Shown: positions 11,876-56,250 of the stretch, piece by piece
Numbering within the stretch: the first letter of the stretch is position 1
Layout: each line of letters starts with the position of its first letter
Sequence record: LR756504.1
Reading direction: 5' to 3' (one strand)
Length of the DNA stretch: 64,000 bases
Notes under the pieces: model-generated
Databases searched by the model: none
What the model was told of the DNA's origin: nothing
What the model saw: the letters and a program-made list of their open reading frames with translations, nothing else
Position numbers and translations under genes: made by a program

Positions 11876-14413
11876 TTAAAATTTGTAAGCATTCGATATA
11901 ATTTTTCTATTAGAATTGTCAATTAGTAACGCCATTCTTGTATCACGCAGGATGTATTGGTTTAGCGATTTTGAAAATTTATCCTTCTCAACTACATCAC
12001 TAAATATTCTAAGATTGGTATAGTACATATTAGATCCTAACAATTCCACTACTAAATTCGTATTATCCCATGTTTGTGGAATGTATGCTGAACCTCCTTC
12101 TGATACTAATTTCAATTCTGATGATGAGGATGAACCTGGTTGAGTATCACCATAACGCTCATATAAAGCCCAATCAATTTTATGTTGTCTTTGATTTAAA
12201 TTAATTATTATACCATACCATTTATTTTGAACTACGCTCATATCATATTCATATAATGTAGCATTAACAACTATTTGTAATTTACCGTCTTTGTATCCAA
12301 TTTTATACCCATTATCATTTTTAAAATTGTGTATGAAATTATAATATTGACCTGAAACTAAATCAACTATATTAAACCAATTCATAAAACATCTATTTTC
12401 ACCTTCTATTAGATAATTATCTAGCTTCGCATAAGTAATAGCTGGTATACCAACAAAATTGCTTAAATCATAAAAATTGAGGGATATAATATTAGGGCCA
12501 TTTTCCAATTCAAAATCAATAATAGGTGCTTTTATACTTAATCTCACTATTTCTTCTGTTAAATTTTGTTGTGTTATTTTATCTGAAATTTTATTCTTCT
12601 CTTCTTGTACTTGTTCACCAATAAGAGTTTCTAAAGCATTATCTGTTGTAGCATCATGAATTTCTTGATCGAATTCTCGTCTATCAATAGAAGTATCTGT
12701 TTCGTGTTTAGTGAGAATAACTTTATAGTATACTGATGAATTCATGAAATTTTTTGACATTTGTGCATGTTCCACTCTATACCATCTATTTGTCAAACAA
12801 AAGAAAATAATATCTTTTTTAGCAGGTCTTTCTGTAATACCAAACGCATTATGAAATTCATCTTTAGTGATATTAATTTCAGATGATTCGAATAAAGCTA
12901 AATCAAAACTTGTAAAATTTACAGTATTTTCTGGTATTTTATTTTCAGGAAATAATATTTTTATTCTCTTTTTATTACTAAGGTTCATCGTACCATATTC
13001 ATGTAATATATTATCGACACCAGAACCATCAGGTGTTGCTTTATAATAATCAACTTCCCAACCATAAACATTAGTTACATCATTTGCTAATTTATTATAC
13101 AAATCAATTGGTTGACTAAAATTATATGGGTTATATGTAGGTGCGCATGAATTAGCCCACTCATTTTTAATTTCATCAAATGTAGCTATGCTATCAGGTG
13201 TATCAACATTATTAGTTGAACCACAACTTGGACATTCACAGTCAACATTATATAAACAATCCATTCTCAATCCTAATTTATTCATTTTCGCATAATCATT
13301 TGTGATATTTTGAAAATCTCCTTCGAATATAATATCTCTTAATCCAATTGATCCTGTATTATCTGTACCATTTCTCGTAAATGCTATTTCTATATAAAAG
13401 AAAGATAGCATATCTGTTTTAATTGTTGAAAAATTTGCTTGTGTGAATGGAGTCCATTGACTCCATTGTTTTTTATTTTTAGAATACCTGTATTGAATAT
13501 CCATCATTCTTGTAGAAGTTTCACCAATAATTGATATTTGATAACCAGTAAATTTGAATGCTTTAAAAACAAAAGGAGGTTGTAAAATTATTCTATCTCC
13601 TATTTTATATAAGTCAAATATGGTATCAGTAAATATGTTAGATTGTTCTGCTAAAAATTTAACTTCATTTAGATAAATTCTTTTTTTATAATTATTATCT
13701 AAACTTCTTTCTGTATAAATTATTTGAAGAATTTCACCACCTATAAGAGTAATTCCAGCAAAAAGTGGATTAATGTATATAAAATCACCTTTATTAATTA
13801 TACTATCAGCAGTTAATAAACTTGTTCCGAATAATATAGAGTTACTATCCAATAATACGCTATCAAGAACGAATCCATAACTACCTTGTGTGGGATAATC
13901 TCTATCGAATTGAAAGAAACTACTACCATCAAATACATTTGTCCATCCTAATGTTTTAGGTTTATCCACTACTATAGAAAATGTAAAATTTCTATCTACT
14001 GGTATACAGCTATATTTAAACTCAAACCATGCATCATATCCTTTAATAGTATTAAAATTTTCTAAATCTATAATAAGCCAATCTGACCAAGTTATGTTAT
14101 CGAATGAGTATCTAAATTGTTTTTCAAAATATAAAAAATCGGTATCACCAATAACATTATCGATGAAATCTTTCCATTCTAAAATATTTTCAATTTTTTC
14201 CGTTGTTCTCCATTGAATTACTTCATTTTCATATGCGAGCGATACTAAATTTGTACCTGATGTACCTTCCAAACTAGGAAATATAGGAATACCATTAGTA
14301 CCATCATCATCCCATAAATAAGGAATTTGAACTAATGATGGTGAAAATATAAAAGATAGTGATACATTTTCATTCAAGTCGTTGTTTACTATAGGATTAA
14401 GTATGATACTCAA
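11876..14413 (-). CDS. Large virion protein with T4 gp14 neck-like central domain and C-terminal LamG-like domain
   Basis: VDYYK..DNILHEYG..ITKDEFHNAFG..RPAKKDIIFF..YRVEH resembles the gp14 pattern (recalled, not searched); beta-sandwich-like C-terminus. Confidence 0.45.
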   Translation of the reverse strand: MSIILNPIVNNDLNENVSLSFIFSPSLVQIPYLWDDDGTNGIPIFPSLEGTSGTNLVSLAYENEVIQWRTTEKIENILEWKDFIDNVIGDTDFLYFEKQFRYSFDNITWSDWLIIDLENFNTIKGYDAWFEFKYSCIPVDRNFTFSIVVDKPKTLGWTNVFDGSSFFQFDRDYPTQGSYGFVLDSVLLDSNSILFGTSLLTADSIINKGDFIYINPLFAGITLIGGEILQIIYTERSLDNNYKKRIYLNEVKFLAEQSNIFTDTIFDLYKIGDRIILQPPFVFKAFKFTGYQISIIGETSTRMMDIQYRYSKNKKQWSQWTPFTQANFSTIKTDMLSFFYIEIAFTRNGTDNTGSIGLRDIIFEGDFQNITNDYAKMNKLGLRMDCLYNVDCECPSCGSTNNVDTPDSIATFDEIKNEWANSCAPTYNPYNFSQPIDLYNKLANDVTNVYGWEVDYYKATPDGSGVDNILHEYGTMNLSNKKRIKILFPENKIPENTVNFTSFDLALFESSEINITKDEFHNAFGITERPAKKDIIFFCLTNRWYRVEHAQMSKNFMNSSVYYKVILTKHETDTSIDRREFDQEIHDATTDNALETLIGEQVQEEKNKISDKITQQNLTEEIVRLSIKAPIIDFELENGPNIISLNFYDLSNFVGIPAITYAKLDNYLIEGENRCFMNWFNIVDLVSGQYYNFIHNFKNDNGYKIGYKDGKLQIVVNATLYEYDMSVVQNKWYGIIINLNQRQHKIDWALYERYGDTQPGSSSSSELKLVSEGGSAYIPQTWDNTNLVVELLGSNMYYTNLRIFSDVVEKDKFSKSLNQYILRDTRMALLIDNSNRKIISNAYKF

Positions 14414-16514: not shown

Positions 16515-16533
16515 TATATAAAATTGGAAAATT

Positions 16534-16944
16534 ATGTATAAAGATAGAACCCAATTACTTAAAGAAATTGAAAAATTACAAGAAGAAAGACATTCATTAA
16601 GGCTTAAAGAAGCTCAAATTTACAGAATTTTAGCTATAGTTATTGGTGTTGTTACTGCTGGTTTAATATTCAATTCTTTTATAGGAGTAACAACGAATCA
16701 GATATATGTTTCTATTTTTTTAAACATAGTTTCATGTTTCTATATAATCAGAGAATTAGTAAAGAAAAATACAAAAGTTAGTATAAATGATAGTTCACCT
16801 ATTAATGTTTTCGAAAAAGGTGAGAAATTATATACTTTATCTGAAGGTAGATTAAACGAACTATTATCTATTTGTGTAGAGAAAGAAAACTATGAAATAG
16901 CCTCAAAAGTGAGGGATGAATTAAAAAAGTTTAAAAATAATTGA
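16534..16944 (+). CDS. Membrane protein with C-terminal UVR-type motif
   Basis: Two hydrophobic helices; LNELL..CVEKENYEIASKVRDEL. Confidence 0.65.
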   Translation: MYKDRTQLLKEIEKLQEERHSLRLKEAQIYRILAIVIGVVTAGLIFNSFIGVTTNQIYVSIFLNIVSCFYIIRELVKKNTKVSINDSSPINVFEKGEKLYTLSEGRLNELLSICVEKENYEIASKVRDELKKFKNN

Positions 16945-16970
16945 AATTCTAATATAAATTATTATATTTG
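16941..16970 (+). promoter_or_regulatory. Bacteroidota-type housekeeping promoter
   Basis: TTG-N19-TATATTTG. Confidence 0.7.
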
Positions 16971-16974
16971 TAAT

Positions 16975-17319
16975 ATGCTTGATGTAAAAGGAGAAAATTT
17001 ATTCAGATTTTTAAGGAAAACTGTACTTAATGGTTTATATTGTAAATCAATTGAGAGTGGTGATGATATTCAATATACCGATGCGGAACTTAATCGTATT
17101 ATGGGATATATTAGTGTATTGCAACCGCAGGATAAAGTTCTTCTTTTAAATGTTATGAAGAAAAGCAAATTTCCTGATGATTTTTTAGGTTTGTTTGAGG
17201 AAGAAATGAAATTTATAAAAAAGAATTATAAAAATGATAAATGGGATTTCTTTACTAAAAAAGGCTTCAAAGACGAAATTAAGAAGGTTTTCAAAGTTGA
17301 AGAAACTGAACAAGGTTAA
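16975..17319 (+). CDS. Hypothetical protein
   Basis: 114-aa ORF directly after a host-type promoter. Confidence 0.65.
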   Translation: MLDVKGENLFRFLRKTVLNGLYCKSIESGDDIQYTDAELNRIMGYISVLQPQDKVLLLNVMKKSKFPDDFLGLFEEEMKFIKKNYKNDKWDFFTKKGFKDEIKKVFKVEETEQG

Positions 17320-23616: not shown

Positions 23617-24276
23617 ATGATTTTACTATTTGAAGAGTATAATCCTCTTATGGATTTGAATAATGATGTAAAGGATCATTTATCTCAATTTCCTTACTTA
23701 AGTTATACTATAAAGGATGAAGATAATGGTATAGTATTAACATTTAATAAAGATGTTTCATTAAAATACGTTAAAGGTATTTTAGATCCTTTCAAAATTG
23801 AAGTTAAAAATGAATTTCCAGTAAAAATTAAAGTTATTTCTAAAAAACTAGTTGATTCTTTTGAAGAATTTAACGGTAAGCTTATAATTGGTCCTACAGA
23901 GAAAATTGATATTCCAACATTAAATTTAAAAGGAATTTCGGTAAAAATTGATAGCGGAGCGACCTGTTCTAGTATGGGTGTGTCTTGGTTACATGTAGAT
24001 AAAAAAAATAAAAAAGTTAGTTTTTTACCATTGGATAAAACATATCCACAATATGTAAATAAAAAATTTACTTTACCTTTGATTGAAGAAGTTAGTGTTC
24101 AAAACTCTAGTGGTAAACAAGAATTAAGACCATTAATTAAATTAGATATTATAATTAAGGGTAAAACATACGAAACATTTTTTTCATTAGCTAGTCGTAG
24201 AGAATTAGAATTTCCTATATTAATTGGTCGTGATGCGTTATCTGGAAGATTTTTAATAGATATTTCTACTATATAA
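23617..24276 (+). CDS. Retropepsin-like aspartic protease (RimK-associated 'ATP-dependent zinc protease' family) with N-terminal extension
   Basis: KIDSGATCS, QELRPLI, SLASRRELEFPILIGRDAL. Confidence 0.85.
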   Translation: MILLFEEYNPLMDLNNDVKDHLSQFPYLSYTIKDEDNGIVLTFNKDVSLKYVKGILDPFKIEVKNEFPVKIKVISKKLVDSFEEFNGKLIIGPTEKIDIPTLNLKGISVKIDSGATCSSMGVSWLHVDKKNKKVSFLPLDKTYPQYVNKKFTLPLIEEVSVQNSSGKQELRPLIKLDIIIKGKTYETFFSLASRRELEFPILIGRDALSGRFLIDISTI

Positions 24277-24338
24277 AATATAGTTCCGTGAAGTGATAAT
24301 ATTGTAATATATAAACCCAAATAGGTTTAAAGCAACTC

Positions 24339-27300: not shown

Positions 27301-29066
27301 CATTAAGAATTGTAGGTATATCGAATGACTTAAATGATATTGGTATAAAGAATGCTGATAATCCATTAACTAAAACAGGTACATTATATACATATAACAA
27401 TAATATACCAGATGATTTAATTCAGCAAGAAGATGGTACATCACCCATTGGTAATTTACATTCTACACCTGATATTAATGAAAGTAATTATCTTAAAGAG
27501 GGTACGATTTTCCATGGGCTTGATCCAAGATTTGTACATAGAACTAAATATAAAGTTTTTTGGTTAGTAGAAGCTTTGAAGAAAGATAATAGTGGTATTG
27601 CAGCAATTAATAAAAAATATAATCCAAAGGATTTAGCATCGGCACAAGATACAGCTAAAAAAACTGGTGGCGGAGGTGCGTCACGTGGTAAAGAATGGTA
27701 TACACTTATAGATAAATTTACTGCTATTCCAATACTTATATCGAAACTTGTTCCTATAATAGCGGGTAAATTAATTCCTTTAATAGTTAAAATAATACAA
27801 TTGATTTCTAATCCAAGTAAGATAACAGAATTATTAACTGATTTAATTACGGATAAAAGTATTAGTAAAGTTCCAATTAATTTTCCAGTTTTCGATAAAG
27901 ATAAAGGTACTTTGAGTAAAGTAATTAAATATAAATCAACAAAACTTCCAAAGACATTTGATGATGGAAAACCTATATCAGACAATCCTTATTATTATGC
28001 AGGTCCACAAGTAGGTGTTGATAACCCTAAATTGGTTTCTATGATGGATGGTAAAGCTGTTGCTGATTTTGGAAAAGGATTAAGTGCTAGTAAGAAACCA
28101 TTATTTAGTTTTGGTATTGATACAAATTTTGCTGGATCACCACCATTTAAACTCATTACTAAAAAAGCCAAGCAAACAGATTTCACAAAACCTGCAATAG
28201 ATAAAACACAACCTTTATTTGAATTAATAATGAATTTTATAAAAATGCCATTCGAAATTATATTCATGATATTTAAATGGGTTATGAAATGGGTTAAGAA
28301 ATTACTTAATCCAACGAAAATTCCATCAGCAGTATCGGAGCTATTATCTTTTAAATGGCTAATAGATATAATTGGTAAAAATAGTTTATTCCAAATATTA
28401 GGAATAGAAGATCCTTTAGAGAGTAGTAAAGTTGCTAAGGGTATGGATGATGTAATAAATGCAAACGGAAAAAATGCACAAGGATTATTTAATAATCTTA
28501 TTAAAGCAATGGCTGGTGGTACACCTGAATATAGTGAAATATTAATATATCATTTATTTAAAAATGGTGTATTTTTAAAAGAAGAAACAGTAGTGCGACC
28601 ATATAATGGCTCTATTAATGATCCTAATTTGAGTGGTAATACTTCTGATAAAAATAGAAATAACAATTTGAATAATGCTAATAATCCACCATTACAGTCG
28701 GCAAGTAATAAAGAAGGTGATGGTGATGGTGCAATAGGTAATTTAAATTTCAATCCACTTGCTTTATGTGGACCAAGATTTTTTAATATTAATGATTTAG
28801 TTCCAATACCGTTCTGGTCAGCAATGCCATCTTTTAATATGTGTGAATTACCACAGATATTTTTAAAACCATTAGAATTGATTTTAGGTACATTAAAACT
28901 AATACAAGAATTATTAAATTCTTTAATAAGTATGCCTATATCTATATTAGGATTGGATCCACAAATACCTATTCCTAAATTTGGTAAAGAGATACCATTT
29001 GCTAATGTATTTGAAGATAAATTAAATCAATTGAAAAGTAAGCTTCAACAAATAAAAACAGCTTAA
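24339..29066 (+). CDS. Very large hypothetical protein (1575 aa), possibly virion or baseplate associated
   Basis: Uninterrupted 4.7-kb ORF after AATATATA; no recognisable family motif. Confidence 0.6.
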   Translation: MPDFKFSGNKFYFSILNDPNGKHPLLVPLVTNPNFIDTKTFKVTGPPGIKELIEGDLGITELLMSKIMEPVFASLKINTLLSEFLANQPDPLEKANPNAVPTQLKGSDAFNKAKKKLLASAIPGSVYLQSGGEPTGLKSLEKTIITSMMESYKPLMDFAKILIELLSVGEDVVCRFLGSSIKILGKEIGSPSKNPAYWSQDLGYAKTMTYSKKEFDDAIAGGLAEFNKSMAKNNPIKENLKNGDSTPGDIVSDEKEALYVGYFDETGNYIDPPQWVKNSNKWLEILDRNNNRIGAPFDQLSTNLHDGAEQVRSYHEKAIERIKTQKVLMLEEITKRATDINSKYDALIKATNENTSYTTEVKASELKTIANKKVEDIKVLEEEKKQSASEFDDLIQTLIDVIDGTNVAGNNWEDDNDKSKGVNPPSVISEWIAKTRGSQLRQKYFPETVSTAQTIIKSNGEGKEPYVFIPKFAADYRGRSVQLEVPLIYSNQIRQEEVRSSSEFFDSRERKPLNKGGYRYSMRNVIDNIDLFYNTDANEPYRENNITYFRHDNKTDYYIPDKLKTFYLPIEWEEIREFEVRYKNDPSKVIRTETEVILHKIDIENDYELRVIKVVNLPLLPPAGQAGLLEFFPSNNDLLIMRSQNQIQFLNVSENPIIESVELLDVTNTVTSTTSGSTITNINATRFKTSNRYVDEAYYTKDSFFYLRKENSKWGDEVKNKDVDDSEIYQVKSINKQWASKSITFTYNPRLGVVGSQRMVENGTDFSQHIIINNSNKTIQIHSSKVSDLPKFILESKSNQFKILSGKNANREIRITNWDSTTEYAIFKYEGELIDEIFSTSAQYDNSGLLTKFDTTVWNYQYAEFSHVETYQTFTHERTFNAIIYPIRDINYVPAILKQTPRAIVIQGMNDSSILASLTDKVKRTGVDLKKFNKPDLQVDGIFNISSVKTVKTKKGVLVKVLQVNETIENKFLNRAYSGNRNDKFYFPLRIVGISNDLNDIGIKNADNPLTKTGTLYTYNNNIPDDLIQQEDGTSPIGNLHSTPDINESNYLKEGTIFHGLDPRFVHRTKYKVFWLVEALKKDNSGIAAINKKYNPKDLASAQDTAKKTGGGGASRGKEWYTLIDKFTAIPILISKLVPIIAGKLIPLIVKIIQLISNPSKITELLTDLITDKSISKVPINFPVFDKDKGTLSKVIKYKSTKLPKTFDDGKPISDNPYYYAGPQVGVDNPKLVSMMDGKAVADFGKGLSASKKPLFSFGIDTNFAGSPPFKLITKKAKQTDFTKPAIDKTQPLFELIMNFIKMPFEIIFMIFKWVMKWVKKLLNPTKIPSAVSELLSFKWLIDIIGKNSLFQILGIEDPLESSKVAKGMDDVINANGKNAQGLFNNLIKAMAGGTPEYSEILIYHLFKNGVFLKEETVVRPYNGSINDPNLSGNTSDKNRNNNLNNANNPPLQSASNKEGDGDGAIGNLNFNPLALCGPRFFNINDLVPIPFWSAMPSFNMCELPQIFLKPLELILGTLKLIQELLNSLISMPISILGLDPQIPIPKFGKEIPFANVFEDKLNQLKSKLQQIKTA

Positions 29067-31441: not shown

Positions 31442-33544
31442 ATGGATTTTAAAAAGACATTTATTAGTCTTACGCAGTGGACAATACCTCATGGATATGA
31501 GGAAAGTATTGCACATTTGCTACCTAAAGGAGTACAAAAAGACGGTATTGGTAATTATCATATTACCATTGGTGAAAATAGTAAAACATTGTTTACTTGT
31601 CATTTAGATACTGTTTCTAAAAGAGAGAAAATTCATCATGTTATTAGTGGTAATATTATTAAAACTAATGGTAAAACTATTTTAGGTGGTGACAATAAAG
31701 CTGGTGTATGTATTTTGATGTATCTAATTGAACAAAATGTTCCTGGTACATATTACTTCTTTGTTGGCGAAGAGTGTGGAACAATAGGTTCAAGATGGGC
31801 ATTACAAAATAATACTGAATTTTTTAAAGGATTTAAGAGAGCCGTTGCATATGATAGAAGAGAGCAAGGTTCAATTATTACATATCAAAGAGGTAGAAGA
31901 TGTTGTTCTGATGATTTTGCTAATGCTTTATCAATGGATTTTGCAAAAAATAGAATGGAATATCATATAGATCCCAATGGAGTTTATACGGATACTGCTG
32001 TATTTGTGAATGTAATACCAGAGTGTACTAATTTGTCTGCTGGTGTTGTTGGTGAGCATACTAATAGCGAACATGTAGATATTGAATATTGTGAAAGAGT
32101 AGCTAAAGCTTCTGTTAAAATAGATTGGGAAAATTTACCTGCTATTAGAGAAGCAAAAGAGGAAGATTATAGTAATTATTATAATAGAGGTAATTCACAA
32201 TTCAGAGGTGGTTATACTGTATATGATTACAGAAAGAGGAATGGATTACTTGGTAATAGTAAATGGAAAAAATCAAGAGATCCAGAAGAGGAGGAAGAAG
32301 AGGATGATGATTCGATATTAGCTAATGATGATCATTATCAAGCAACAGGTAGAAGAAATAATATTGTTAATAAACACTTTCATCTTGCAAATAATGAAGA
32401 AGAACATGATTGTGAACATTGTGATGGTGATGGTATACATTCATGTGAAAACTGTGATGGTATGGGTGTTATCGAATGTGATAATTGTGATGGTGTAGGT
32501 AGAAAATATACAGATAAAAATTGTAAAAAATGTAAAGGTGAAGGTACAGTTTTCAATGAAGTTTGTCCTGTGTGTGATGGAGAAGGATATGAATTTACAG
32601 ATTGTAAGAAATGTAAAGGTGTTGGTAATTTAGGTGAGTGTGAAATGTGTGATAGTACAGGAGATGTTGATTGTGTTTTTTGTAATGGCACTGGTATAGA
32701 ATTATTTAATGATGAAGAGGATGATGAAGTAGCTGGGTATGACGATGACGATGATTCTAGTGATTATTCAAGTAGAGGTGGTAGTTTTCTAAACGAAGAT
32801 CCAAATGATTATAATTGGAGAAGATGGAATAATAATGATAAAAATACTAAAAATGGAATTGAAAAATTTGATTCATTTTTAAATAGAAGTAATAAAAATG
32901 ATGGGCATACATCACTATATTCTGAAAATCTAATGGTTGTTAGACAACCAAATGGTTTATTTGGTGTATTTAATGAAAAAACTTCAAATTTTGAAAAATT
33001 TAATCTACTTGATGAAGAAGCACAAGAATTTTTAAATGACGAATTAGATATTTCAAATTTAATAATTCAACATATGATTCAGGCAGCAGTAAATGATAAA
33101 TTATCAAAAGAAAATTCTGAATTCCATAAATCGGATGATGGATTGGGTAGATGGAGATATTGTTTAAATGAACTTTCATCTAAAGTAGGTGGTGAAAATA
33201 TGGTTGAAGAAGCAATAGATGAAATTAAAAAATATATCCTAAAGCACGGTGAAAAAGTTGCAATGGATAAAAAGAAAACTCGTAGAGGTAATAAGAAGTC
33301 TACTAATAGAGAAAATGTTTATGAAAATTTCATAAAGGCTGAAAATAGAAGAGACTTCATTAATGCATTAAAAGGTAGTAGCTTAGAAGAATTTATTGAT
33401 GAAATGAAACATTTATCACCAAAATCTTTAAATATAACCCTAAATGTTATTCTAAACTTTGTTAAAGCAGAAGATTTAGAAAAAGACAAACCTGTCCATA
33501 TAATATTTAATATTTTTAAGAAACAAGTTGACGAATTAATCTAA
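31442..33544 (+). CDS. M20/M28-type metallopeptidase fused to eight CxxCxGxG-type zinc-finger repeats
   Basis: CHLDTV, LGGDNKAG, GEECG, YTD, GEHT; 8 CxxC motifs flanked by acidic tracts. Confidence 0.8.
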   Translation: MDFKKTFISLTQWTIPHGYEESIAHLLPKGVQKDGIGNYHITIGENSKTLFTCHLDTVSKREKIHHVISGNIIKTNGKTILGGDNKAGVCILMYLIEQNVPGTYYFFVGEECGTIGSRWALQNNTEFFKGFKRAVAYDRREQGSIITYQRGRRCCSDDFANALSMDFAKNRMEYHIDPNGVYTDTAVFVNVIPECTNLSAGVVGEHTNSEHVDIEYCERVAKASVKIDWENLPAIREAKEEDYSNYYNRGNSQFRGGYTVYDYRKRNGLLGNSKWKKSRDPEEEEEEDDDSILANDDHYQATGRRNNIVNKHFHLANNEEEHDCEHCDGDGIHSCENCDGMGVIECDNCDGVGRKYTDKNCKKCKGEGTVFNEVCPVCDGEGYEFTDCKKCKGVGNLGECEMCDSTGDVDCVFCNGTGIELFNDEEDDEVAGYDDDDDSSDYSSRGGSFLNEDPNDYNWRRWNNNDKNTKNGIEKFDSFLNRSNKNDGHTSLYSENLMVVRQPNGLFGVFNEKTSNFEKFNLLDEEAQEFLNDELDISNLIIQHMIQAAVNDKLSKENSEFHKSDDGLGRWRYCLNELSSKVGGENMVEEAIDEIKKYILKHGEKVAMDKKKTRRGNKKSTNRENVYENFIKAENRRDFINALKGSSLEEFIDEMKHLSPKSLNITLNVILNFVKAEDLEKDKPVHIIFNIFKKQVDELI

Positions 33545-33641: not shown

Positions 33642-34130
33642 ATGATAAAATTAAATCCAACGATTAAAATTTTGATTGGTCCGCCATGCAGCGGTAAAAC
33701 TTTTTACGTAAATAAAAATGCTTTATCTAACGAAGTAGTAATATCAAGAGATGCTATTATAATGGAATTACATCCCGATTTAAATTATACAGAAGCATAT
33801 AGAGTATGTAATCAGAAAGATGTTAATAGAATATTTAAAGAAAGATTTGACGAATGTGTAGCTAATGGGGTATCTATTATCATAGACAAAACTAATTTAA
33901 CTTCTAAAACAAGAAAAAAACTATTAGCTAAAGTCTCTGTTGATTATACTAAAATAGCGATACTATTTGATTGGGATAAGAAAATATTGTTAGAACGAAA
34001 TATTAAGAGAAATATAGAAGAAGGTAAATTTATATCTGATAAAGTATTTGAAGATATGATAAATTCTTTTGTACCTATAAAAGATATTGAAGGATTTGAC
34101 AAAGTTATATCTTTAAAAATAAGCAAATAA
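33642..34130 (+). CDS. P-loop kinase (AAA_33 / polynucleotide-kinase-like)
   Basis: IGPPCSGKT, ISRD, IIDKTNLTSKTRK, LERNIKR. Confidence 0.85.
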   Translation: MIKLNPTIKILIGPPCSGKTFYVNKNALSNEVVISRDAIIMELHPDLNYTEAYRVCNQKDVNRIFKERFDECVANGVSIIIDKTNLTSKTRKKLLAKVSVDYTKIAILFDWDKKILLERNIKRNIEEGKFISDKVFEDMINSFVPIKDIEGFDKVISLKISK

Positions 34131-34190
34131 AATATGTATGTCAAGTATATGAGAAAAAGGTAGATTAATAATTAGAACTATACTTGTGTG

Positions 34191-34439
34191 ATGGATGTTA
34201 AAAAAGGGGATACTATAATATGTAAAAAAGAATTTACATTAGCTGGTCATAATTTTATACTTAATCAAAAATATATTATTAAAGGTGATGGTATTATTGG
34301 TGGAAAGCGAGTACTTACTATTTCGATAAAAGGTGGAGAACGATATTTAGGAAGTTTACGTAATATTTATGAATCAACTTTAAATAATAATTTTGAAAAT
34401 AAATGGGATAAAAGAAAAAGAATTATTGATGAACTATAA
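34191..34439 (+). CDS. Hypothetical protein
   Basis: VKKGDTIICKK start; C-terminal KRKRIIDEL. Confidence 0.6.
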   Translation: MDVKKGDTIICKKEFTLAGHNFILNQKYIIKGDGIIGGKRVLTISIKGGERYLGSLRNIYESTLNNNFENKWDKRKRIIDEL

Positions 34440-34471
34440 CAAAGAACAATTTTAATCGTTATATATACTGT

Positions 34472-34561
34472 ATGAAACAAATAACAAAATATTAGCCTTT
34501 TTCAATTTTTAACTGAATACCCAATTCAGTAATGCTAATATATTGTATAATCAAAAAATAA
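34472..34561 (+). promoter_or_regulatory. Leader uORF MKQITKY-UAG with further in-frame UGA and UAA and a nested hairpin, upstream of the release factor gene
   Basis: ATG 34472, TAG 34493-95, TGA 34514-16, TAA 34559-61; stems 34489-96/34534-41 and 34512-18/34524-30. Confidence 0.5.
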
Positions 34562-34570
34562 TTTACAAAA

Positions 34571-35245
34571 ATGGAAAAGATAATTTTAGAAATTCGTCAA
34601 GCCGAAGGTGGTGATGATGCGAAACTACTTACAGAAGATATGGCTAATATTTATATCAAAGCATCCAATATTCAAAACTTCAAAGTTAAACCTATTGAGT
34701 GAAGAGATGGCTTCATAACACTTTCTGTTGAAGGTGAAGGCGTGAAGCAATATTTTTCAAATGAAAGCGGTATTCATTGTTGGAATAGAGTTCCTCCTAC
34801 AGAAAAAAGAGGAAGAATGCAAACTAGTTATGTATCAGTATCCATTTTATCTCAATATAAAAAAACGTTTAATATGAATTGTGATGATGTGAGAGTTCTT
34901 TATACAAAAGGCTCTGGTCCTGGGGGACAAGCAAAGAATAAATTAGAAACTTGTGTGGTATTAATGCACATTCCTACTAATATATCTGTTAGAATTGATG
35001 GTAGAAGTAGAGTTCATAATGAAAAAGAAGCTTGGAGAATATTAGAAGATAGATTAAAAAAAGTTCATAACAATATAGAAGATAGTATTGAAAACACTAA
35101 TAGGTTTGATCAAATTGGATATGGTAAAAGAGGTAATAAAAAAAGGAGTTATAAAGTAAAAGACAACTTAGTTATTGATCATGATACTAATAAGAAAATT
35201 CAATTAAAAGATATTCTTAAAGGTAGAATCGAACTTCTTAAATAA
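34571..35245 (+). CDS. prfA: RF1-like class I peptide chain release factor lacking domain 1, with in-frame TGA at codon 44
   Basis: MEKIILEIRQAEGGDDAKLL...KPIE*RDGF...NESGIHCWNRVPPTEKRGRMQTS (PxT motif)...GSGPGGQ; TGA at 34700-02 is in frame with the track ORF 34742-35245. Confidence 0.85.
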
Positions 35246-35308
35246 GATATTGCTTAATTTCTTTCAAAACAATGAAAATTAAAGATTTATCAAAAATGTT
35301 TAAAAATA

Positions 35309-35340
35309 TTTGCTTAATTAGAAAATACCTATTATATTTG
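35309..35340 (+). promoter_or_regulatory. Bacteroidota-type housekeeping promoter (telA)
   Basis: TTTG-N20-TATATTTG. Confidence 0.75.
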
Positions 35341-35367
35341 TAAAAAAGAAATAAACCGACATCATAT

Positions 35368-36492
35368 ATGAACTCAGAAAAATCATTAAAAACAGTAGAA
35401 ATTAATAAAGTAAAGCCAGAAGTTTTAGCGAAAGCTCAAAGTCTTGTCAAAACTATTGATATTTCTAAACAGGATAGTATTACTAACCTTGGATTAGAAA
35501 CTCAGCAAAAGTTGAGTTCTATGAATAATGCAATTCTTGATGAAGTTCGAACAAAAGATTCGGGTGAAGTAGGTAAAACTATTAATGAATTACTTACTCA
35601 AATCAATGCCATTGATGTTGATTTAAAACCAAGCCCACTTGCAAGCATTCCAATTATTGGAAGTTTTCTTGCTAAAATGTTTGATAAAGGAAAAGAAATT
35701 GTTTCTAAATATGAATCAGTTAAAACTAATATCAATGGTATAGTTTTAAAGCTTGATAAAAGTCGCTTAGGATTAAGAAAAGACAATAATAATTTTCAAA
35801 CTATGTTTGAAAAGAATGTTATAAACATTTCTGATTTGGATGCTGCTATTGTTGCAGGTAAAATGAAAGTTGAAGAATTGAGTGGTGTCGTAGCATCATT
35901 CAGTCCTGAAGATGGTATTGAGGATTATGAGAAAAAAGATACCGTTAACTTTTTGGATAGACTTGAAAAGAAAGTATATGACTTGCAATTAACAAGACAT
36001 ATTACTATTCAATCATTGCCTCAAATTAGATTGATTCAATCAAACAATCAATTGCTCGAAGATAAAATTTTAAGTTCAATTAACAATACCATTCCAATTT
36101 GGCAACAACAAATGGTTATTGGACTTGGTATTCAAAGACAAAAAAATGTGTTAGAAGTTGCTAAAAATATGGATGATGCAACAAATATAATGATTGTTAA
36201 AAATTCCGAGAATCTTAAATTTAACACAATTGAAGCTGCTAAAGCTAACGAGCGTGGAATTATTGACGTGGCTTCTTTGAAGAAAGTGAATGAAGATATA
36301 ATGTCCACTCTTGATGAACTAGTTAAAATTAAAGAAGATGGAAAGAAAGCAAGACAACAAGCTGAGGTAGAACTTTCAATGATTGAAAGTGAATTGAAAA
36401 ATAAAATCCTTACAATCAAACAAGGTACATCAGCAACAGATGTTGAACCAAATGTTAAAATTATCAATATAGACGAGCCAGAAAATGTCTAA
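35368..36492 (+). CDS. telA: Toxic anion resistance protein TelA family
   Basis: QDSITNLGLETQQKL, QSLPQIRLIQSNNQLL, NTIPIWQQQM, NERGIIDVASL. Confidence 0.9.
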   Translation: MNSEKSLKTVEINKVKPEVLAKAQSLVKTIDISKQDSITNLGLETQQKLSSMNNAILDEVRTKDSGEVGKTINELLTQINAIDVDLKPSPLASIPIIGSFLAKMFDKGKEIVSKYESVKTNINGIVLKLDKSRLGLRKDNNNFQTMFEKNVINISDLDAAIVAGKMKVEELSGVVASFSPEDGIEDYEKKDTVNFLDRLEKKVYDLQLTRHITIQSLPQIRLIQSNNQLLEDKILSSINNTIPIWQQQMVIGLGIQRQKNVLEVAKNMDDATNIMIVKNSENLKFNTIEAAKANERGIIDVASLKKVNEDIMSTLDELVKIKEDGKKARQQAEVELSMIESELKNKILTIKQGTSATDVEPNVKIINIDEPENV

Positions 36493-54764: not shown

Positions 54765-54844
54765 GCTCCCATGGTGGAATGGCAGACACGCTCGGCTTAA
54801 AATCGAGTGCCTTGTGCATACAGGTTCAAGTCCTGTTGGGAGTA
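54765..54844 (+). tRNA. tRNA-Leu(UAA)
   Basis: GCTCCCA/TGGGAGT-A acceptor, CTCGG-CTTAAAA-TCGAG, long variable arm, TTCAAGT T-loop; no encoded CCA. Confidence 0.92.
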
Positions 54845-54857
54845 CTAATTATCACAT

Positions 54858-54943
54858 GCCCTTGTGATGTAATGCAGCCATGAACGCCTTAGAAGCGTTT
54901 GCGAAGTAATAGTAGCGTGTAGGTTCGAGTCCTACCAAGGGTA
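54858..54943 (+). tRNA. tRNA-Leu(UAG)
   Basis: GCCCTTG/CAAGGGT-A, AACGC-CTTAGAA-GCGTT, long variable arm. Confidence 0.92.
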
Positions 54944-54952
54944 CACAATAAT

Positions 54953-55041
54953 GGAGGGAATCTGGCTGGATGAAGAGCCAATCTTGAAAATTGGTAAATC
55001 GGTGATGAACTGGTTTGTGGGTTCGAGTCCCACTTCCTCCT
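54953..55041 (+). tRNA. tRNA-Ser(UGA)
   Basis: GGAGGGA/TTCCTCC-T, CCAAT-CTTGAAA-ATTGG, long variable arm. Confidence 0.9.
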
Positions 55042-55047
55042 CAAAAT

Positions 55048-55120
55048 GGTACTATGGCCGAGTGGATATAGGCGCACGTCTGCAAAACGTGATACATCAG
55101 TTCGAACCTGATTAGTACCT
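55048..55120 (+). tRNA. tRNA-Cys(GCA)
   Basis: GGTACTA/TAGTACC-T (U73), CACGT-CTGCAAA-ACGTG. Confidence 0.93.
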
Positions 55121-55127
55121 CAAAAAT

Positions 55128-55214
55128 GGAGAGTAGGCAAATATTGGTTTGTTGCGGCATCCTGCTAAGATGTTCCGTATAAAAGCGGTGAGGGTTCAAT
55201 TCCCTTGCTCTCCT
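55128..55214 (+). tRNA. tRNA-Ser(GCU)
   Basis: GGAGAGT/GCTCTCC-T, GCATC-CTGCTAA-GATGT, long variable arm, enlarged D region. Confidence 0.88.
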
Positions 55215-55293
55215 CAAATAAAGTTCTATTGTGTAAATATTATCACACTTAAACGTAGCCGAACTTTTTGATATATAATATCAAAAAAAAGCT

Positions 55294-55998
55294 ATGAGTT
55301 TAAAAAGTGAGAAAATATTAAAGTATGCTAAAAAAATTAGAGCGATTGAATTATTAGGTGGTTGTTGCATTGAATGTGGTGTTGATAATATACATAAATT
55401 ATGTTTTCACCATATAAATAGAAATGATAAAAAATTTGATATTTCGGATAAATTAGGATTAAAGTGGAACAAAATAAAAGATGAAGTTATAAAATGTGAG
55501 TTATTATGTTTAAATTGTCATACAGAAAAACATTATAATGAAATTTCTGATAAAAAAGATATAAAAAGAAGGAGTGAAAAAAAACTATTTATTTCAATAA
55601 AGGGTGATTCATGTGAATATTGTAATTATAATAAGTGTGATGCAACATTAGAATTTCATCATCATAATGATAATAAAAATTTCTCTATAGGGAAAAAAAG
55701 ATTAACTAAAAATAATTTATTATTATTTATAGAAGAAATAAACAAGTGTACTTTATTATGTAAAAATTGCCATATTCATTTACATAAAGATAGTTTCTAT
55801 GATGATAATAAAGATGAAATAATAAAAAAGAAAAATGATTATATTGATTTAAATAAAATTGATTTAGATAAATTTTTTGAATTATATAATGGTGGGTATA
55901 AACAAGTTGAAATATCAAAACTGTTAAATTGTTCAAAAAGTAGAATCTCAGAATTAGTTTCAAAATATTTTAAAGGGAAGAATACTCAAGTGATTTAA
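55294..55998 (+). CDS. HNH homing endonuclease with two HNH-like modules and C-terminal HTH
   Basis: CIEC..FHH...CLNCH and CEYC..FHH...CKNCH; QVEISKLLNCSKSRIS; inserted in the tRNA cluster. Confidence 0.85.
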   Translation: MSLKSEKILKYAKKIRAIELLGGCCIECGVDNIHKLCFHHINRNDKKFDISDKLGLKWNKIKDEVIKCELLCLNCHTEKHYNEISDKKDIKRRSEKKLFISIKGDSCEYCNYNKCDATLEFHHHNDNKNFSIGKKRLTKNNLLLFIEEINKCTLLCKNCHIHLHKDSFYDDNKDEIIKKKNDYIDLNKIDLDKFFELYNGGYKQVEISKLLNCSKSRISELVSKYFKGKNTQVI

Positions 55999-56066
55999 GA
56001 GGATACATTGGAAATGTATTAGATCGGGATTAACCTGGTGCGTGAGTTTGAATCTCACTTCTTCCA
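55976..56066 (+). tRNA. tRNA-Ser(GGA)
   Basis: GGAAGAA/TTCTTCC-A, ATACA-TTGGAAA-TGTAT, long variable arm; first 23 nt overlap the end of the HNH ORF. Confidence 0.85.
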
Positions 56067-56071
56067 CAAAT

Positions 56072-56145
56072 GGCTTAGTGATGTAATTGGTAAACGTGTT
56101 CGGTTCAAACCCGAAATTTTATAGGTTCGAGTCCTATCTAAGCTA
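56072..56145 (+). tRNA. tRNA-Leu(CAA) with short variable loop
   Basis: GGCTTAG/CTAAGCT-A, TTCGG-TTCAAAC-CCGAA, 5-nt variable loop ATTTT. Confidence 0.82.
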
Positions 56146-56156
56146 CAATAATAAAT

Positions 56157-56231
56157 GCCATTGTGGTGGAATTGGTTATACACACTAGTCTAAGAAACTA
56201 GGAATTGCAGGTTCGACTCCTGTCAATGGTA
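56157..56231 (+). tRNA. tRNA-Leu(AAG) with A34 and short variable loop
   Basis: GCCATTG/CAATGGT-A, CTAGT-CTAAGAA-ACTAG, 5-nt variable loop GAATT, Leu-like D arm. Confidence 0.85.
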
Positions 56232-56250
56232 CTAAAAAATATATATTTAT

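What the first reader, a model, noticed from the sequence alone, without database searches (positions are those of the whole stretch)
34571..35245. RF1-like release factor with a single in-frame UGA: candidate programmed readthrough
Seen: the true gene starts at 34571 (EIRQAEGGDDAKLL matches RF domain 2) and continues in frame through GAG TGA AGA at 34700-02 to PxT (VPPT) and GGQ motifs. Domain 1 is absent. Other long genes are intact under code 11. Established: bacterial RF2 autoregulates by a +1 frameshift at an internal UGA; PxT marks UAA/UAG specificity, while UGA is read by RF2. Inference: full-length protein is made only when UGA termination is weak, giving a readthrough (not frameshift) sensor, or cross-regulation between host RF2 and phage RF.
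Basis: partly seen in the sequence, partly recalled or inferred. Interest (0 to 1): 0.76.

Follow-up and report, generated by a model that had tools for sequence, protein, structure and literature searches.

The report
Phage release-factor gene gated by UGA
A giant phage carries a shortened RF1-type translation-termination factor whose own gene is interrupted by one conserved, in-frame UGA stop codon. This appears to be programmed stop-codon readthrough, a control known for giant-virus and plant release factors but, as far as I could find, not reported for a bacterial-type one.

Summary
Window 34571-35245 (+) is one RF1-type class-I release-factor gene lacking domain 1. It has a single in-frame TGA at 34700-34702, a PPT (PxT) motif and a GGQ motif.

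The window comes from the 636-kb uncultured phage LR756504. That genome reads as standard code throughout and has no tRNA(UCA). This is the only gene in it with a stop inside continuous coding sequence.

The stop is not an error or decay:
- An independent, syntenic metagenomic relative keeps the same TGA.
- Of 85 phage homologues, 44 carry in-frame stops at three recurrent columns of the same β-hairpin.
- About 34 instead need a +1 frameshift at a prfB-like CTT-TGA/TAG site (33 scored by script, one read by eye); 2 of these also carry an in-frame TGA. Only 5 are uninterrupted.
- dN/dS is 0-0.27 on both sides of the stops while the stops persist past saturated dS.
- In-frame TGAs are always followed by A or C.
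- Uninterrupted relatives have Trp at these columns.

Best reading: programmed UGA readthrough, probably inserting Trp through host tRNA-Trp, so that output of the phage factor depends on weak RF2 termination. Readthrough, the inserted residue and the sensor role are inferred, not shown. I rate it a new variant of a known kind; interest 0.8.

The parts
34571..35245 (+). Whole release-factor gene: 43 codons, an in-frame TGA, 180 codons, then TAA. The conceptual product is 224 residues covering RF1-type domains 2-4 only.
   Evidence: A model of the closest uninterrupted relative superposes on ribosome-bound RF1 at TM 0.88-0.90.
34571..34699 (+). N piece (43 codons). It carries the EIRQAEGGDDAKLL element. 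The Gly-Gly at 34607-34612 is the universally conserved pair at the tip of the helix that reads the first stop-codon base. It also carries the first strand of the domain-2 β-hairpin.
   Evidence: Pfam PCRF positions 101-140 and NCBIfam prfA positions 105-144. dN/dS against L178 is 0.020/0.129. The role of the Gly-Gly pair is taken from PMC1586002.
34700..34702 (+). In-frame TGA (codon 44), followed by A (context GAG TGA AGA). This is the recoding site, called 'column 29' because it lies 29 codons before the R of RVPPT.
   Evidence: The same column is TGA in L003, L022-L025, L029/L030, L082, L099 and L178. It is Trp in uninterrupted P0004 and P0014.
34703..35242 (+). C piece (180 codons): the rest of domain 2/4 with the codon-reading loop, the GGQ domain 3 and the C-terminal helix.
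   Evidence: NCBIfam prfA E 2.9e-37. Best PDB sequence match is T. thermophilus RF1, residues 158-330.
34790..34801 (+). VPPT: a PxT-type 'anticodon' tripeptide, which marks RF1-type UAA/UAG specificity.
   Evidence: Read directly from the sequence. Invariant in alignments A1 and A2.
34922..34930 (+). GGQ peptidyl-tRNA hydrolysis motif.
   Evidence: Read directly from the sequence. Invariant in alignments A1 and A2.
34440..34570 (+). A+T-rich intergenic leader upstream of the gene. It contains no domain-1 coding capacity.
   Evidence: The consensus scan found no sigma-70-like promoter or terminator in this stretch.

Best explanation
The gene encodes a phage class-I release factor of RF1 type: a PPT codon-reading loop, GGQ, domains 2-4 and no domain 1. 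Ribosomes starting at 34571 reach UGA-A at codon 44, in a β-hairpin of domain 2.

Most ribosomes probably terminate there through host RF2 and release a useless 43-residue peptide. A fraction decode the UGA with a near-cognate host tRNA, most likely tRNA-Trp, and continue in frame to the 224-residue factor. Output of the phage factor would therefore rise when RF2-dependent termination in the infected cell is weak or saturated. This is a readthrough counterpart of the prfB +1 frameshift sensor, acting here across factors: an RF2 codon sits inside an RF1-type gene.

Shown:
- the gene anatomy;
- that the stop is genuine, and that in-frame stops in the homologues are conserved under purifying selection of the flanking codons, gene-specific, in weak-termination contexts and at Trp or tolerant columns;
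- that relatives use a textbook CTT-TGA/TAG +1 shift site in the same hairpin.

Inferred:
- that readthrough happens at all;
- the inserted residue;
- the dependence on RF2;
- the factor's UAA/UAG specificity.
For: 1. Gene-specific. This is the only in-frame stop inside continuous coding sequence in 636 kb. TGA ends 54 of 453 long ORFs. There is no tRNA(UCA), even at relaxed ARAGORN settings. There is only one RF gene in the genome. In relatives' flanks, the RF gene is again the only credible gene with internal TGAs.

2. Recurrent. Of 85 phage homologues, 44 have in-frame stops at columns 34, 29 or 21. About 34 need a +1 shift at CTT/TTT followed by TGA, TAG or TAA: 33 scored by script and L077 read by eye. 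In the GC-rich members the shift site often sits behind GGAGG with a 3-nt spacer, as in prfB. Two of these (L035, L083) need both a readthrough and a shift. Five are uninterrupted and one (L064) looks degraded. The same pattern appears in 80 loci from cellular assemblies.

3. Selected. dN/dS is 0-0.27 upstream and downstream of the stops in the 13 of 15 relative pairs where dS could be estimated, with dS from 0.05 to above 2 and every stop retained. One pair shows a TAG/TGA swap at a single column. Window versus L178 gives omega 0.15 upstream of the stop, 0.08 for codons 45-62 and 0.28 for the rest.

4. Weak-termination context. In 46 distinct in-frame TGA contexts the next base is A (23) or C (23), never T or G. 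Genuine terminal TGAs in this genome are followed by T 24, A 20, G 7, C 3. Leu after an in-frame TGA is always CTN (24 of 24), although CTN is only 26% of Leu codons genome-wide. A C after UGA makes a weak stop, as in prfB, and the fourth base affects termination efficiency.

5. Inserted residue. Uninterrupted relatives have Trp at the window's column (P0004 LQWRDGF, P0014) and at column 21 (P0008, P0009, P0014, P0021, P0028). Other relatives have Cys there. tRNA-Trp and tRNA-Cys are the known near-cognate decoders of UGA, and UGA readthrough rises when RF2 activity falls (PMC5373646).

6. The N piece carries an element needed for stop-codon reading, so a C piece alone would be defective.
Against: - No expression data exist. 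Readthrough efficiency at UGA-A in the presumed Bacteroidota host is unknown.
- Many relatives need two successive UGA readthroughs, which near-cognate decoding alone would make very inefficient.
- An RF1-type factor cannot itself relieve a UGA termination deficit, so the feedback logic is indirect.
- No conserved RNA structure follows the stop. A hairpin 3' of the window's TGA has z = -1.85 and is not conserved.
- TGG to TGA or TAG is a single G-to-A change favoured by A+T pressure, so mutation bias contributes to where the stops arise.
- The window's allele differs from the family at two codon-reading residues (N for Q before PPT; Q for H in xTS), so its specificity is uncertain.
Confidence: 0.6

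Rival explanations
1. Dedicated suppression or a transient code change. In the infected cell UGA is efficiently read as Trp, by a phage or host suppressor tRNA or after RF2 inactivation. The RF1-type factor would then be part of, or a readout of, a code-4-like switch like the one proposed for TGA-recoded Jade phages.
For: Trp occupies the same columns in uninterrupted relatives. TGA-recoded Jade phages encode RF1 next to a suppressor tRNA and TrpRS (bioRxiv 10.1101/2021.08.26.457843). Requiring two UGAs would be easy under efficient suppression. Suppressor tRNAs are often missed by detection tools.
Against: No tRNA(UCA) and no tRNA-Trp were found in 636 kb, even at relaxed thresholds. No other gene uses internal TGA, whereas 54 long ORFs end in TGA. 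TAG replaces TGA at the same column in L025, L029 and L030. Relatives use frameshift sites instead. The Jade module is itself written in standard code.
Confidence: 0.12
2. Fixed attenuator, not a sensor. The leaky stop simply sets a constitutively very low yield of a factor that is harmful in excess. It carries no information about RF2 activity.
For: The stops sit at substitution-tolerant or Trp columns. The recoding mode is freely exchanged among close relatives, between two TGAs and a CTT TAG C shift, as if only 'low yield' mattered. No stimulatory RNA element is conserved.
Against: Low yield could be set more simply by a weak promoter or start codon. The devices chosen are always stop-codon based, and in GC-rich members they copy the prfB sensor cassette including its Shine-Dalgarno element and spacing. 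The association is specific to a termination-factor gene.
Confidence: 0.15
3. Split gene. Termination at UGA is final, and a separate initiation (for example GTG 34742) yields an N-truncated 167-residue factor, with or without the 43-residue peptide as a second subunit.
For: Gene callers predict exactly these two ORFs here and in L178. Many database entries are 160-180-residue C pieces.
Against: The 13 codons between the TGA and the GTG, and the 7-12 codons between the two stops in relatives, are conserved as protein. No conserved start codon follows the stops. The frame is always preserved (or offset by exactly +1 at CTT-stop). The N piece carries the Gly-Gly element needed to read the stop codon.
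Confidence: 0.06
4. Pseudogene, or a sequencing or assembly error.
For: A single nonsense codon is the commonest way for a gene to die. TGG to TGA is one transition in an A+T-rich genome.
Against: The same TGA is present in an independent run. All family-invariant residues are intact. Omega is well below 1 on both sides of the stop. Across the family, the in-frame stops in intact frames are almost all TGA (a few TAG) and never TAA, although TAA is 79% of terminators. Only one degraded copy (L064) was seen.
Confidence: 0.03

Closest known systems
Bacterial prfB (RF2) autoregulatory +1 programmed frameshift (SD - CUU UGA C)
   Same: It is a class-I release-factor gene whose full-length product requires recoding at an internal UGA in a weak context. 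Relatives of the window's gene carry the same cassette (GGAGG, 3-nt spacer, CTT TGA).
   Different: In the window the frame continues unchanged, so this is readthrough rather than a shift. The site is codon 44 in domain 2, not codon 26 in domain 1. The factor is PxT (RF1) type, so UGA is not its own codon. The Atkins et al. review states that in-frame UGA readthrough in RF2 genes, and the UAG counterpart in RF1 genes, are unknown in bacteria (PMC5009743). PMC1586002 notes that the RF1 family lacks frameshift control.
Mimivirus/Megavirus class-I release factor (Jeudy et al. 2012, PMC3521657)
   Same: It is a giant-virus-encoded termination factor translated through internal stops by readthrough plus frameshift. 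Relatives L035 and L083 likewise need both.
   Different: That factor is of eRF1/aRF1 type in a eukaryotic host. The two are not homologous in the codon-reading domain, and the recoding positions differ.
RF1 of the 'code-change module' in TGA-recoded Jade phages (Borges et al., bioRxiv 10.1101/2021.08.26.457843)
   Same: It is a phage-encoded RF1-type factor linked to UGA decoding as Trp.
   Different: The Jade RF1 gene is written in standard code and sits beside a suppressor tRNA and TrpRS in a genome whose late genes contain many TGAs. Here the RF gene itself holds the only internal TGA, and no suppressor tRNA was detected.
PrfH (RF-H), the domain-1-less release-factor homologue paired with RtcB2
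   Same: It lacks domain 1 and retains domains 2-4 and GGQ.
   Different: The window's pieces score 59 bits against TIGR03072, whose cut-off is 167. The fold match is TM 0.62, against 0.9 for RF1. No RtcB gene lies nearby. A canonical PxT loop is kept.
Plant eRF1 autoregulation by stop-codon readthrough (PMC5397192)
   Same: Release-factor level is controlled through readthrough of a stop codon in its own mRNA (abstract seen).
   Different: That system is eukaryotic, and the abstract describes a readthrough/NMD autoregulatory circuit. It does not involve an internal stop within a folded domain.

Membership tests
Bacterial RF1 (PrfA) | PCRF and RF-1 domains with a GGQ motif | tested here: met
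   Pfam PCRF and RF-1 hits on the two pieces. GGQ lies at 34922-34930.
Bacterial RF1 (PrfA) | PxT tripeptide in the codon-reading loop | tested here: met
   VPPT at 34790-34801. PPT is invariant in the aligned relatives (A1 and A2).
Bacterial RF1 (PrfA) | N-terminal domain 1 (about 100 residues, the RF3/L11-stalk interface) | tested here: not met
   The profile match starts at position 101-105, with only 2 residues before it. The same holds in phage and cellular relatives.
Bacterial RF1 (PrfA) | Score above the NCBIfam equivalog cut-off (400-423 bits) | tested here: not met
   The two pieces score 29.5 and 128.6 bits.
Bacterial RF1 (PrfA) | UAA/UAG-specific peptide release on the ribosome | not testable with these tools
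   This needs a codon-specific release assay. The window's allele has N for Q three residues before PPT.
RF2 (PrfB) with programmed +1 frameshift | SPF tripeptide | tested here: not met
   The loop reads PPT. The prfB model scores lower than the prfA model.
RF2 (PrfB) with programmed +1 frameshift | CUU UGA C shift site, with the downstream ORF in the +1 frame | tested here: not met
   The window has GAG TGA AGA and the frame stays unchanged. The feature is met in about 34 phage relatives and 59 loci from cellular assemblies, but at a domain-2 position.
PrfH (RF-H) | TIGR03072 score above cut-off, and operon partner RtcB | tested here: not met
   The score is 59.4 bits against a cut-off of 166.65. 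The neighbours are an AAA_33 kinase and TelA, not RtcB.
ArfB / ICT1-type rescue factors | GGQ domain plus a basic C-terminal tail, with no codon-reading domain | tested here: not met
   The codon-reading domain is present. The ArfB model scores 20 bits against a cut-off of 100.
Stop-codon-recoded (code 4) phage with code-change module | Many genes with in-frame TGA, plus a tRNA(UCA) suppressor | tested here: not met
Programmed stop-codon readthrough genes | Stop conserved among diverged homologues, with purifying selection on the coding sequence on both sides | tested here: met
Programmed stop-codon readthrough genes | Demonstrated readthrough product | not testable with these tools
   This needs a reporter assay or mass spectrometry of the junction peptide.

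The most novel reading that the evidence does not exclude
A large, previously unrecognised family of domain-1-less, RF1-type release factors exists in huge phages and in some bacteria, notably Myxococcota. Its members are almost universally expressed through recoding at stop codons. In A+T-rich megaphages this is UGA (sometimes UAG) readthrough, the first such case for a bacterial-type release-factor gene. In G+C-rich members it is a prfB-like CUU-UGA/UAG +1 frameshift placed in domain 2. Together these would form a 'termination-capacity sensor' that couples synthesis of a back-up UAA/UAG factor to the activity of host RF2 (or RF1) during infection.
Probability: 0.5. Interest if true: 0.85.

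Novelty: new variant of a known kind. Interest (0 to 1): 0.8.

Why it matters
Release-factor genes are the classic example of translational autoregulation by recoding. In bacteria, however, only the RF2 +1 frameshift is known. An authoritative review states that the readthrough version, and any RF1 counterpart, had not been found (PMC5009743).

This locus and its roughly 160 relatives would supply both missing cases. They would also give a natural series in which readthrough and frameshifting interchange at the same hairpin.

The finding would show that huge phages regulate, as well as carry, termination factors, apparently by listening to the host's termination capacity. It offers compact, portable UGA/UAG-responsive cassettes for testing how stop-codon context and RF levels set decoding outcomes in Bacteroidota, which lack Shine-Dalgarno recognition.

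There is a practical consequence as well. Annotation pipelines currently split or truncate these genes: database entries are mostly 160-180-residue fragments.

Tried and rejected
- Alternative genetic code. ORF coverage under codes 11, 4 and 15 was compared across all 636 kb and in the relatives' flanks. There was no region-specific gain.
- Suppressor tRNA. ARAGORN at default and relaxed thresholds found no UCA anticodon. Hits at -ps80 are scattered noise. The odd tRNA-like genes with 6-nt anticodon loops look Glu/Lys-like (ARAGORN's call), not opal suppressors.
- Other split genes. Same-frame ORF pairs in the window (16522-17319, 27995-29062, 23703-24326, 12729-13046) are adjacent genes or antisense artefacts. 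A promising TAG pair at genome position 490608 is two adjacent genes.
- Selenocysteine. I rejected this on reasoning: the stops fall at three different columns, TAG variants occur, and no conserved downstream hairpin exists.
- Stimulatory RNA structure. A hairpin 3' of the window's TGA has dG -19 kcal/mol and z -1.85, and is not conserved among column-29 homologues.
- Promoter and terminator scan of 34100-35500. Nothing informative.
- Second RF gene in the genome. None found by tblastn.
- Literature. Six full-text searches and eight papers read turned up no report of recoding in a phage-encoded bacterial-type RF. The library lacks most subscription journals, so absence of a report is not proof.

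Full report
WHAT IS THERE. On the + strand, an ATG at 34571 follows a TAA at 34559-61 and opens a frame of 43 codons. That frame ends in GAG TGA AGA, with the TGA at 34700-34702. The same frame then continues for 180 codons to TAA at 35243-45.

The two pieces match RF1 profiles colinearly. The N piece matches Pfam PCRF positions 101-140 and NCBIfam prfA positions 105-144. The C piece matches PCRF positions 153-194 plus the RF-1 domain, and prfA positions 157-332 at E 2.9e-37. prfA scores above prfB, which scores above prfH, and all three are far below their equivalog cut-offs.

The product would have 224 residues. It carries the EIRQAEGG element, whose Gly-Gly reads the first stop-codon base (PMC1586002). 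It also carries VPPT (PxT type, 34790-34801) and GGQ (34922-34930). Domain 1 is missing. The best sequence matches in the PDB are RF1 chains. An AlphaFold model of the closest uninterrupted relative (P0004; pLDDT 86.7) superposes on ribosome-bound RF1 at TM 0.88-0.90. It superposes on RF2 at 0.82-0.85 and on PrfH at 0.62. In that model the recoding columns lie in one β-hairpin of domain 2: strand 37-44, a turn, then strand 47-53.

WHERE IT COMES FROM. The window is identical to LR756504.1, a 636,363-bp uncultured phage. It is one of the genomes above 634 kb in the Mahaphage clade, which are predicted to infect Bacteroidetes (PMC7162821). G+C content is about 27%.

IS THE STOP SPECIAL? I fetched the rest of the genome in pieces and analysed each piece separately.
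- Under code 11, ORFs of at least 100 codons cover about 85-95% of most 10-kb bins. Coverage is about 50-80% in the first 50 kb, at 245-255 kb and in part of the last 35 kb. Treating TGA or TAG as sense adds nothing region-specific.
- I scored coding potential on both sides of every same-frame stop and removed antisense artefacts. The RF stop then ranks first among TGAs and second overall. The remaining candidates are adjacent genes.
- TGA is a working terminator here, ending 54 of 453 long ORFs.
- ARAGORN finds 38 tRNAs, or 51 at a relaxed threshold. None has a UCA anticodon and none is tRNA-Trp.
- There is no second RF gene.

The genome is therefore not recoded, and the only internal stop in it sits in a termination-factor gene.

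IS IT REAL AND MAINTAINED? A syntenic relative from another run (L178, Logan SRR26541666) has the gene order AAA_33 kinase ... RF ... TelA and flanks about 88% identical. It has the same 43-codon piece and the same TGA, and its next codon differs synonymously (AGA/AGG). Between the two copies, dN/dS is 0.020/0.129 upstream of the stop, 0.024/0.309 for codons 45-62, and 0.41/1.48 for the rest. That last part has been replaced by a divergent allele. All family-invariant residues are intact in the window's copy.

THE FAMILY. tblastn and pattern scans gave 5 GenBank huge-phage loci, 80 IMG/VR loci and 80 loci in cellular assemblies. I mapped each gene relative to the R of R[IV]PPT. Among the 85 phage genes:
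- 44 have in-frame stops only. These fall at three recurrent columns: column 34 (NFN*RV), column 29 (EH*RDG, the window's column) and column 21 (SI*LTG). Nearly all are TGA. TAG occurs at column 21 in L025, L029 and L030 and at column 25 in L041.
- About 34 need a +1 shift at CTT (or TTT) followed by a stop: 33 scored by script and L077 read by eye. G+C-rich members often have cGGAGGggt CTT TGA, which is the prfB geometry of Shine-Dalgarno element, 3-nt spacer and CUU UGA. Some have CTT TAG or CTT TAA instead. A+T-rich members have tgtCTT TAG C with no Shine-Dalgarno element. That fits hosts such as Bacteroidia, which do not use Shine-Dalgarno pairing (PMC10798248).
- 2 of these (L035, L083) need both an in-frame TGA and a +1 shift.
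- 5 are uninterrupted, and 1 (L064) looks degraded.

The cellular-assembly loci show the same picture: 59 with +1 shift sites, 7 with in-frame TGAs and 6 uninterrupted. They come mainly from Myxococcota, some Betaproteobacteria and Planctomycetota, and include isolate genomes of Nannocystis, Minicystis and Thiobacillus. These copies also start directly at the EIR motif, so the whole family lacks domain 1.

On a tree of the C-terminal parts, close relatives switch between 'two in-frame TGAs' and 'CTT TAG C shift'.

SELECTION AND CONTEXT. I compared 15 pairs of relatives. Where dS could be estimated (13 pairs), dN/dS is 0-0.27 both upstream and downstream of the stops, with dS from 0.05 to above 2. 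Every stop is retained as a stop, and in one pair TAG and TGA swap at column 21.

In 46 distinct in-frame TGA contexts, the next base is A (23) or C (23), never T or G. Genuine terminal TGAs in this genome are followed by T 24, A 20, G 7 and C 3. Leu after an in-frame TGA is always CTN (24 of 24), although TTA makes up 62% of Leu codons and CTN only 26%. A C after UGA makes a weak stop, as in prfB. From memory, Poole et al. 1995 ranked the fourth base for UGAN as U > G > A ~ C in E. coli; I did not re-read that paper here.

WHAT IS INSERTED? Uninterrupted full-length relatives in the protein database have Trp exactly at these columns. P0004 is 51% identical to the window's protein and reads LQWRDGF where the window has PIE*RDGF. 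P0014 has Trp at both column 29 and column 21. P0008, P0009, P0021 and P0028 have Trp at column 21. Frameshift-class relatives have Cys at columns 34 and 21. Trp, Cys and stop are all TGN codons. tRNA-Trp and tRNA-Cys are the known near-cognate readers of UGA, and UGA readthrough increases when RF2 is weak (PMC5373646).

MECHANISM. Together these results support programmed UGA readthrough that gates synthesis of a phage RF1-type factor. The prfB-like cassettes in relatives argue that what is being read out is termination activity: RF2 at UGA sites, and RF1 or the factor itself at UAG sites.

The sensor function, the inserted residue and the factor's specificity remain inferred. Three weak points stand out. 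Many relatives need two readthroughs. No conserved stimulatory RNA structure was found. An RF1-type factor cannot itself cure a UGA deficit.

The main rival is efficient dedicated UGA-to-Trp suppression in infected cells. The Trp columns favour it. Against it are the absence of any suppressor tRNA, the absence of other internal TGAs, the TAG variants, and the frameshift variants. The pseudogene, error and split-gene readings are contradicted by the conservation data.

COMPARISON AND NOVELTY. Known relatives in kind are:
- prfB +1 frameshifting;
- the Mimivirus/Megavirus eRF1-type factor, translated by readthrough plus frameshift (PMC3521657);
- plant eRF1 readthrough control;
- the standard-code RF1 of Jade-phage code-change modules.

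The Atkins et al. review states that in-frame UGA readthrough in bacterial RF2 genes, and the UAG/RF1 counterpart, are unknown (PMC5009743). Baranov et al. record that the RF1 family lacks frameshift control (PMC1586002). My searches found no description of this family or of its recoding. Sources name the fragments 'peptide chain release factor 1' at most. I therefore rate it a new variant of a known kind, with the caveat that the searchable library is incomplete.

Noticed in passing
window 54765-56232 (+): An array of eight tRNA genes: Leu (UAA, UAG, CAA, AAG), Ser (UGA, GCU, GGA) and Cys (GCA). These are all the long-variable-arm types plus Cys. The genome as a whole has 38 tRNAs but none for Trp or Pro.
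   Followed up: partly
window 33642-34130, 35368-36492, 31442-33544 (+): The RF gene's neighbours are an AAA_33/zeta-toxin-like P-loop kinase, a TelA-like protein (Pfam E 4.5e-91), and a 700-residue protein with DnaJ-type CxxCxGxG zinc fingers and long acidic tracts. The order kinase ... RF ... TelA is conserved in L178.
   Followed up: partly
L178:2330-3004 versus window 34571-35245: The RF allele is mosaic. The first 62 codons are about 96% identical between the two phages and the flanks about 88%, but codons 63-195, which include the PxT and GGQ regions, are only about 62% identical. This looks like recombinational replacement of the catalytic and decoding part. The window's allele has N for the family's Q before PPT, and Q for H in xTS.
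   Followed up: partly
LR756504 outside the window: 136122-136197, 402360-402435, 461088-461164, 281045-281120 (all -): tRNA-like genes with non-standard anticodon loops. Three share a GGCCC(G/A)T acceptor stem and have 6-nt loops, and each has a weaker partner about 150-270 nt away. One has the 8-nt loop ATTCTAAC, which could present CUA. I did not establish their function.
   Followed up: partly
L098-L177 (genome contigs), e.g. L170 Nannocystis exedens, L145 Minicystis rosea chromosome, L114 Thiobacillus denitrificans, L132 Cupriavidus plasmid: The same PPT-type, domain-1-less RF family, with the CTT-TGA/TAG +1 shift site in domain 2, occurs in assemblies of cellular organisms, especially Myxococcota. 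Whether these copies sit in prophages or mobile elements was not examined.
   Followed up: partly
L005:1501-2010 (LR745208, a 485-kb G+C-rich phage): An RF-like gene in which the PxT tripeptide region is deleted (HRVQRTSNGRIHSS). Its upstream part appears to lie in another frame, like the frameshift class. It may be a release factor without a canonical codon-reading loop.
   Followed up: no
window 34703-34755 (+): A predicted hairpin begins immediately 3' of the in-frame TGA (dG about -19 kcal/mol, z -1.85, 8 of 200 shuffles fold as well). It is not conserved in the other column-29 homologues.
   Followed up: yes
L064 (IMGVR_UViG_3300035183_000733): The one family member that looks degraded. 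An internal deletion removes the hairpin region and there is a frame change with no CTT-stop site.
   Followed up: no
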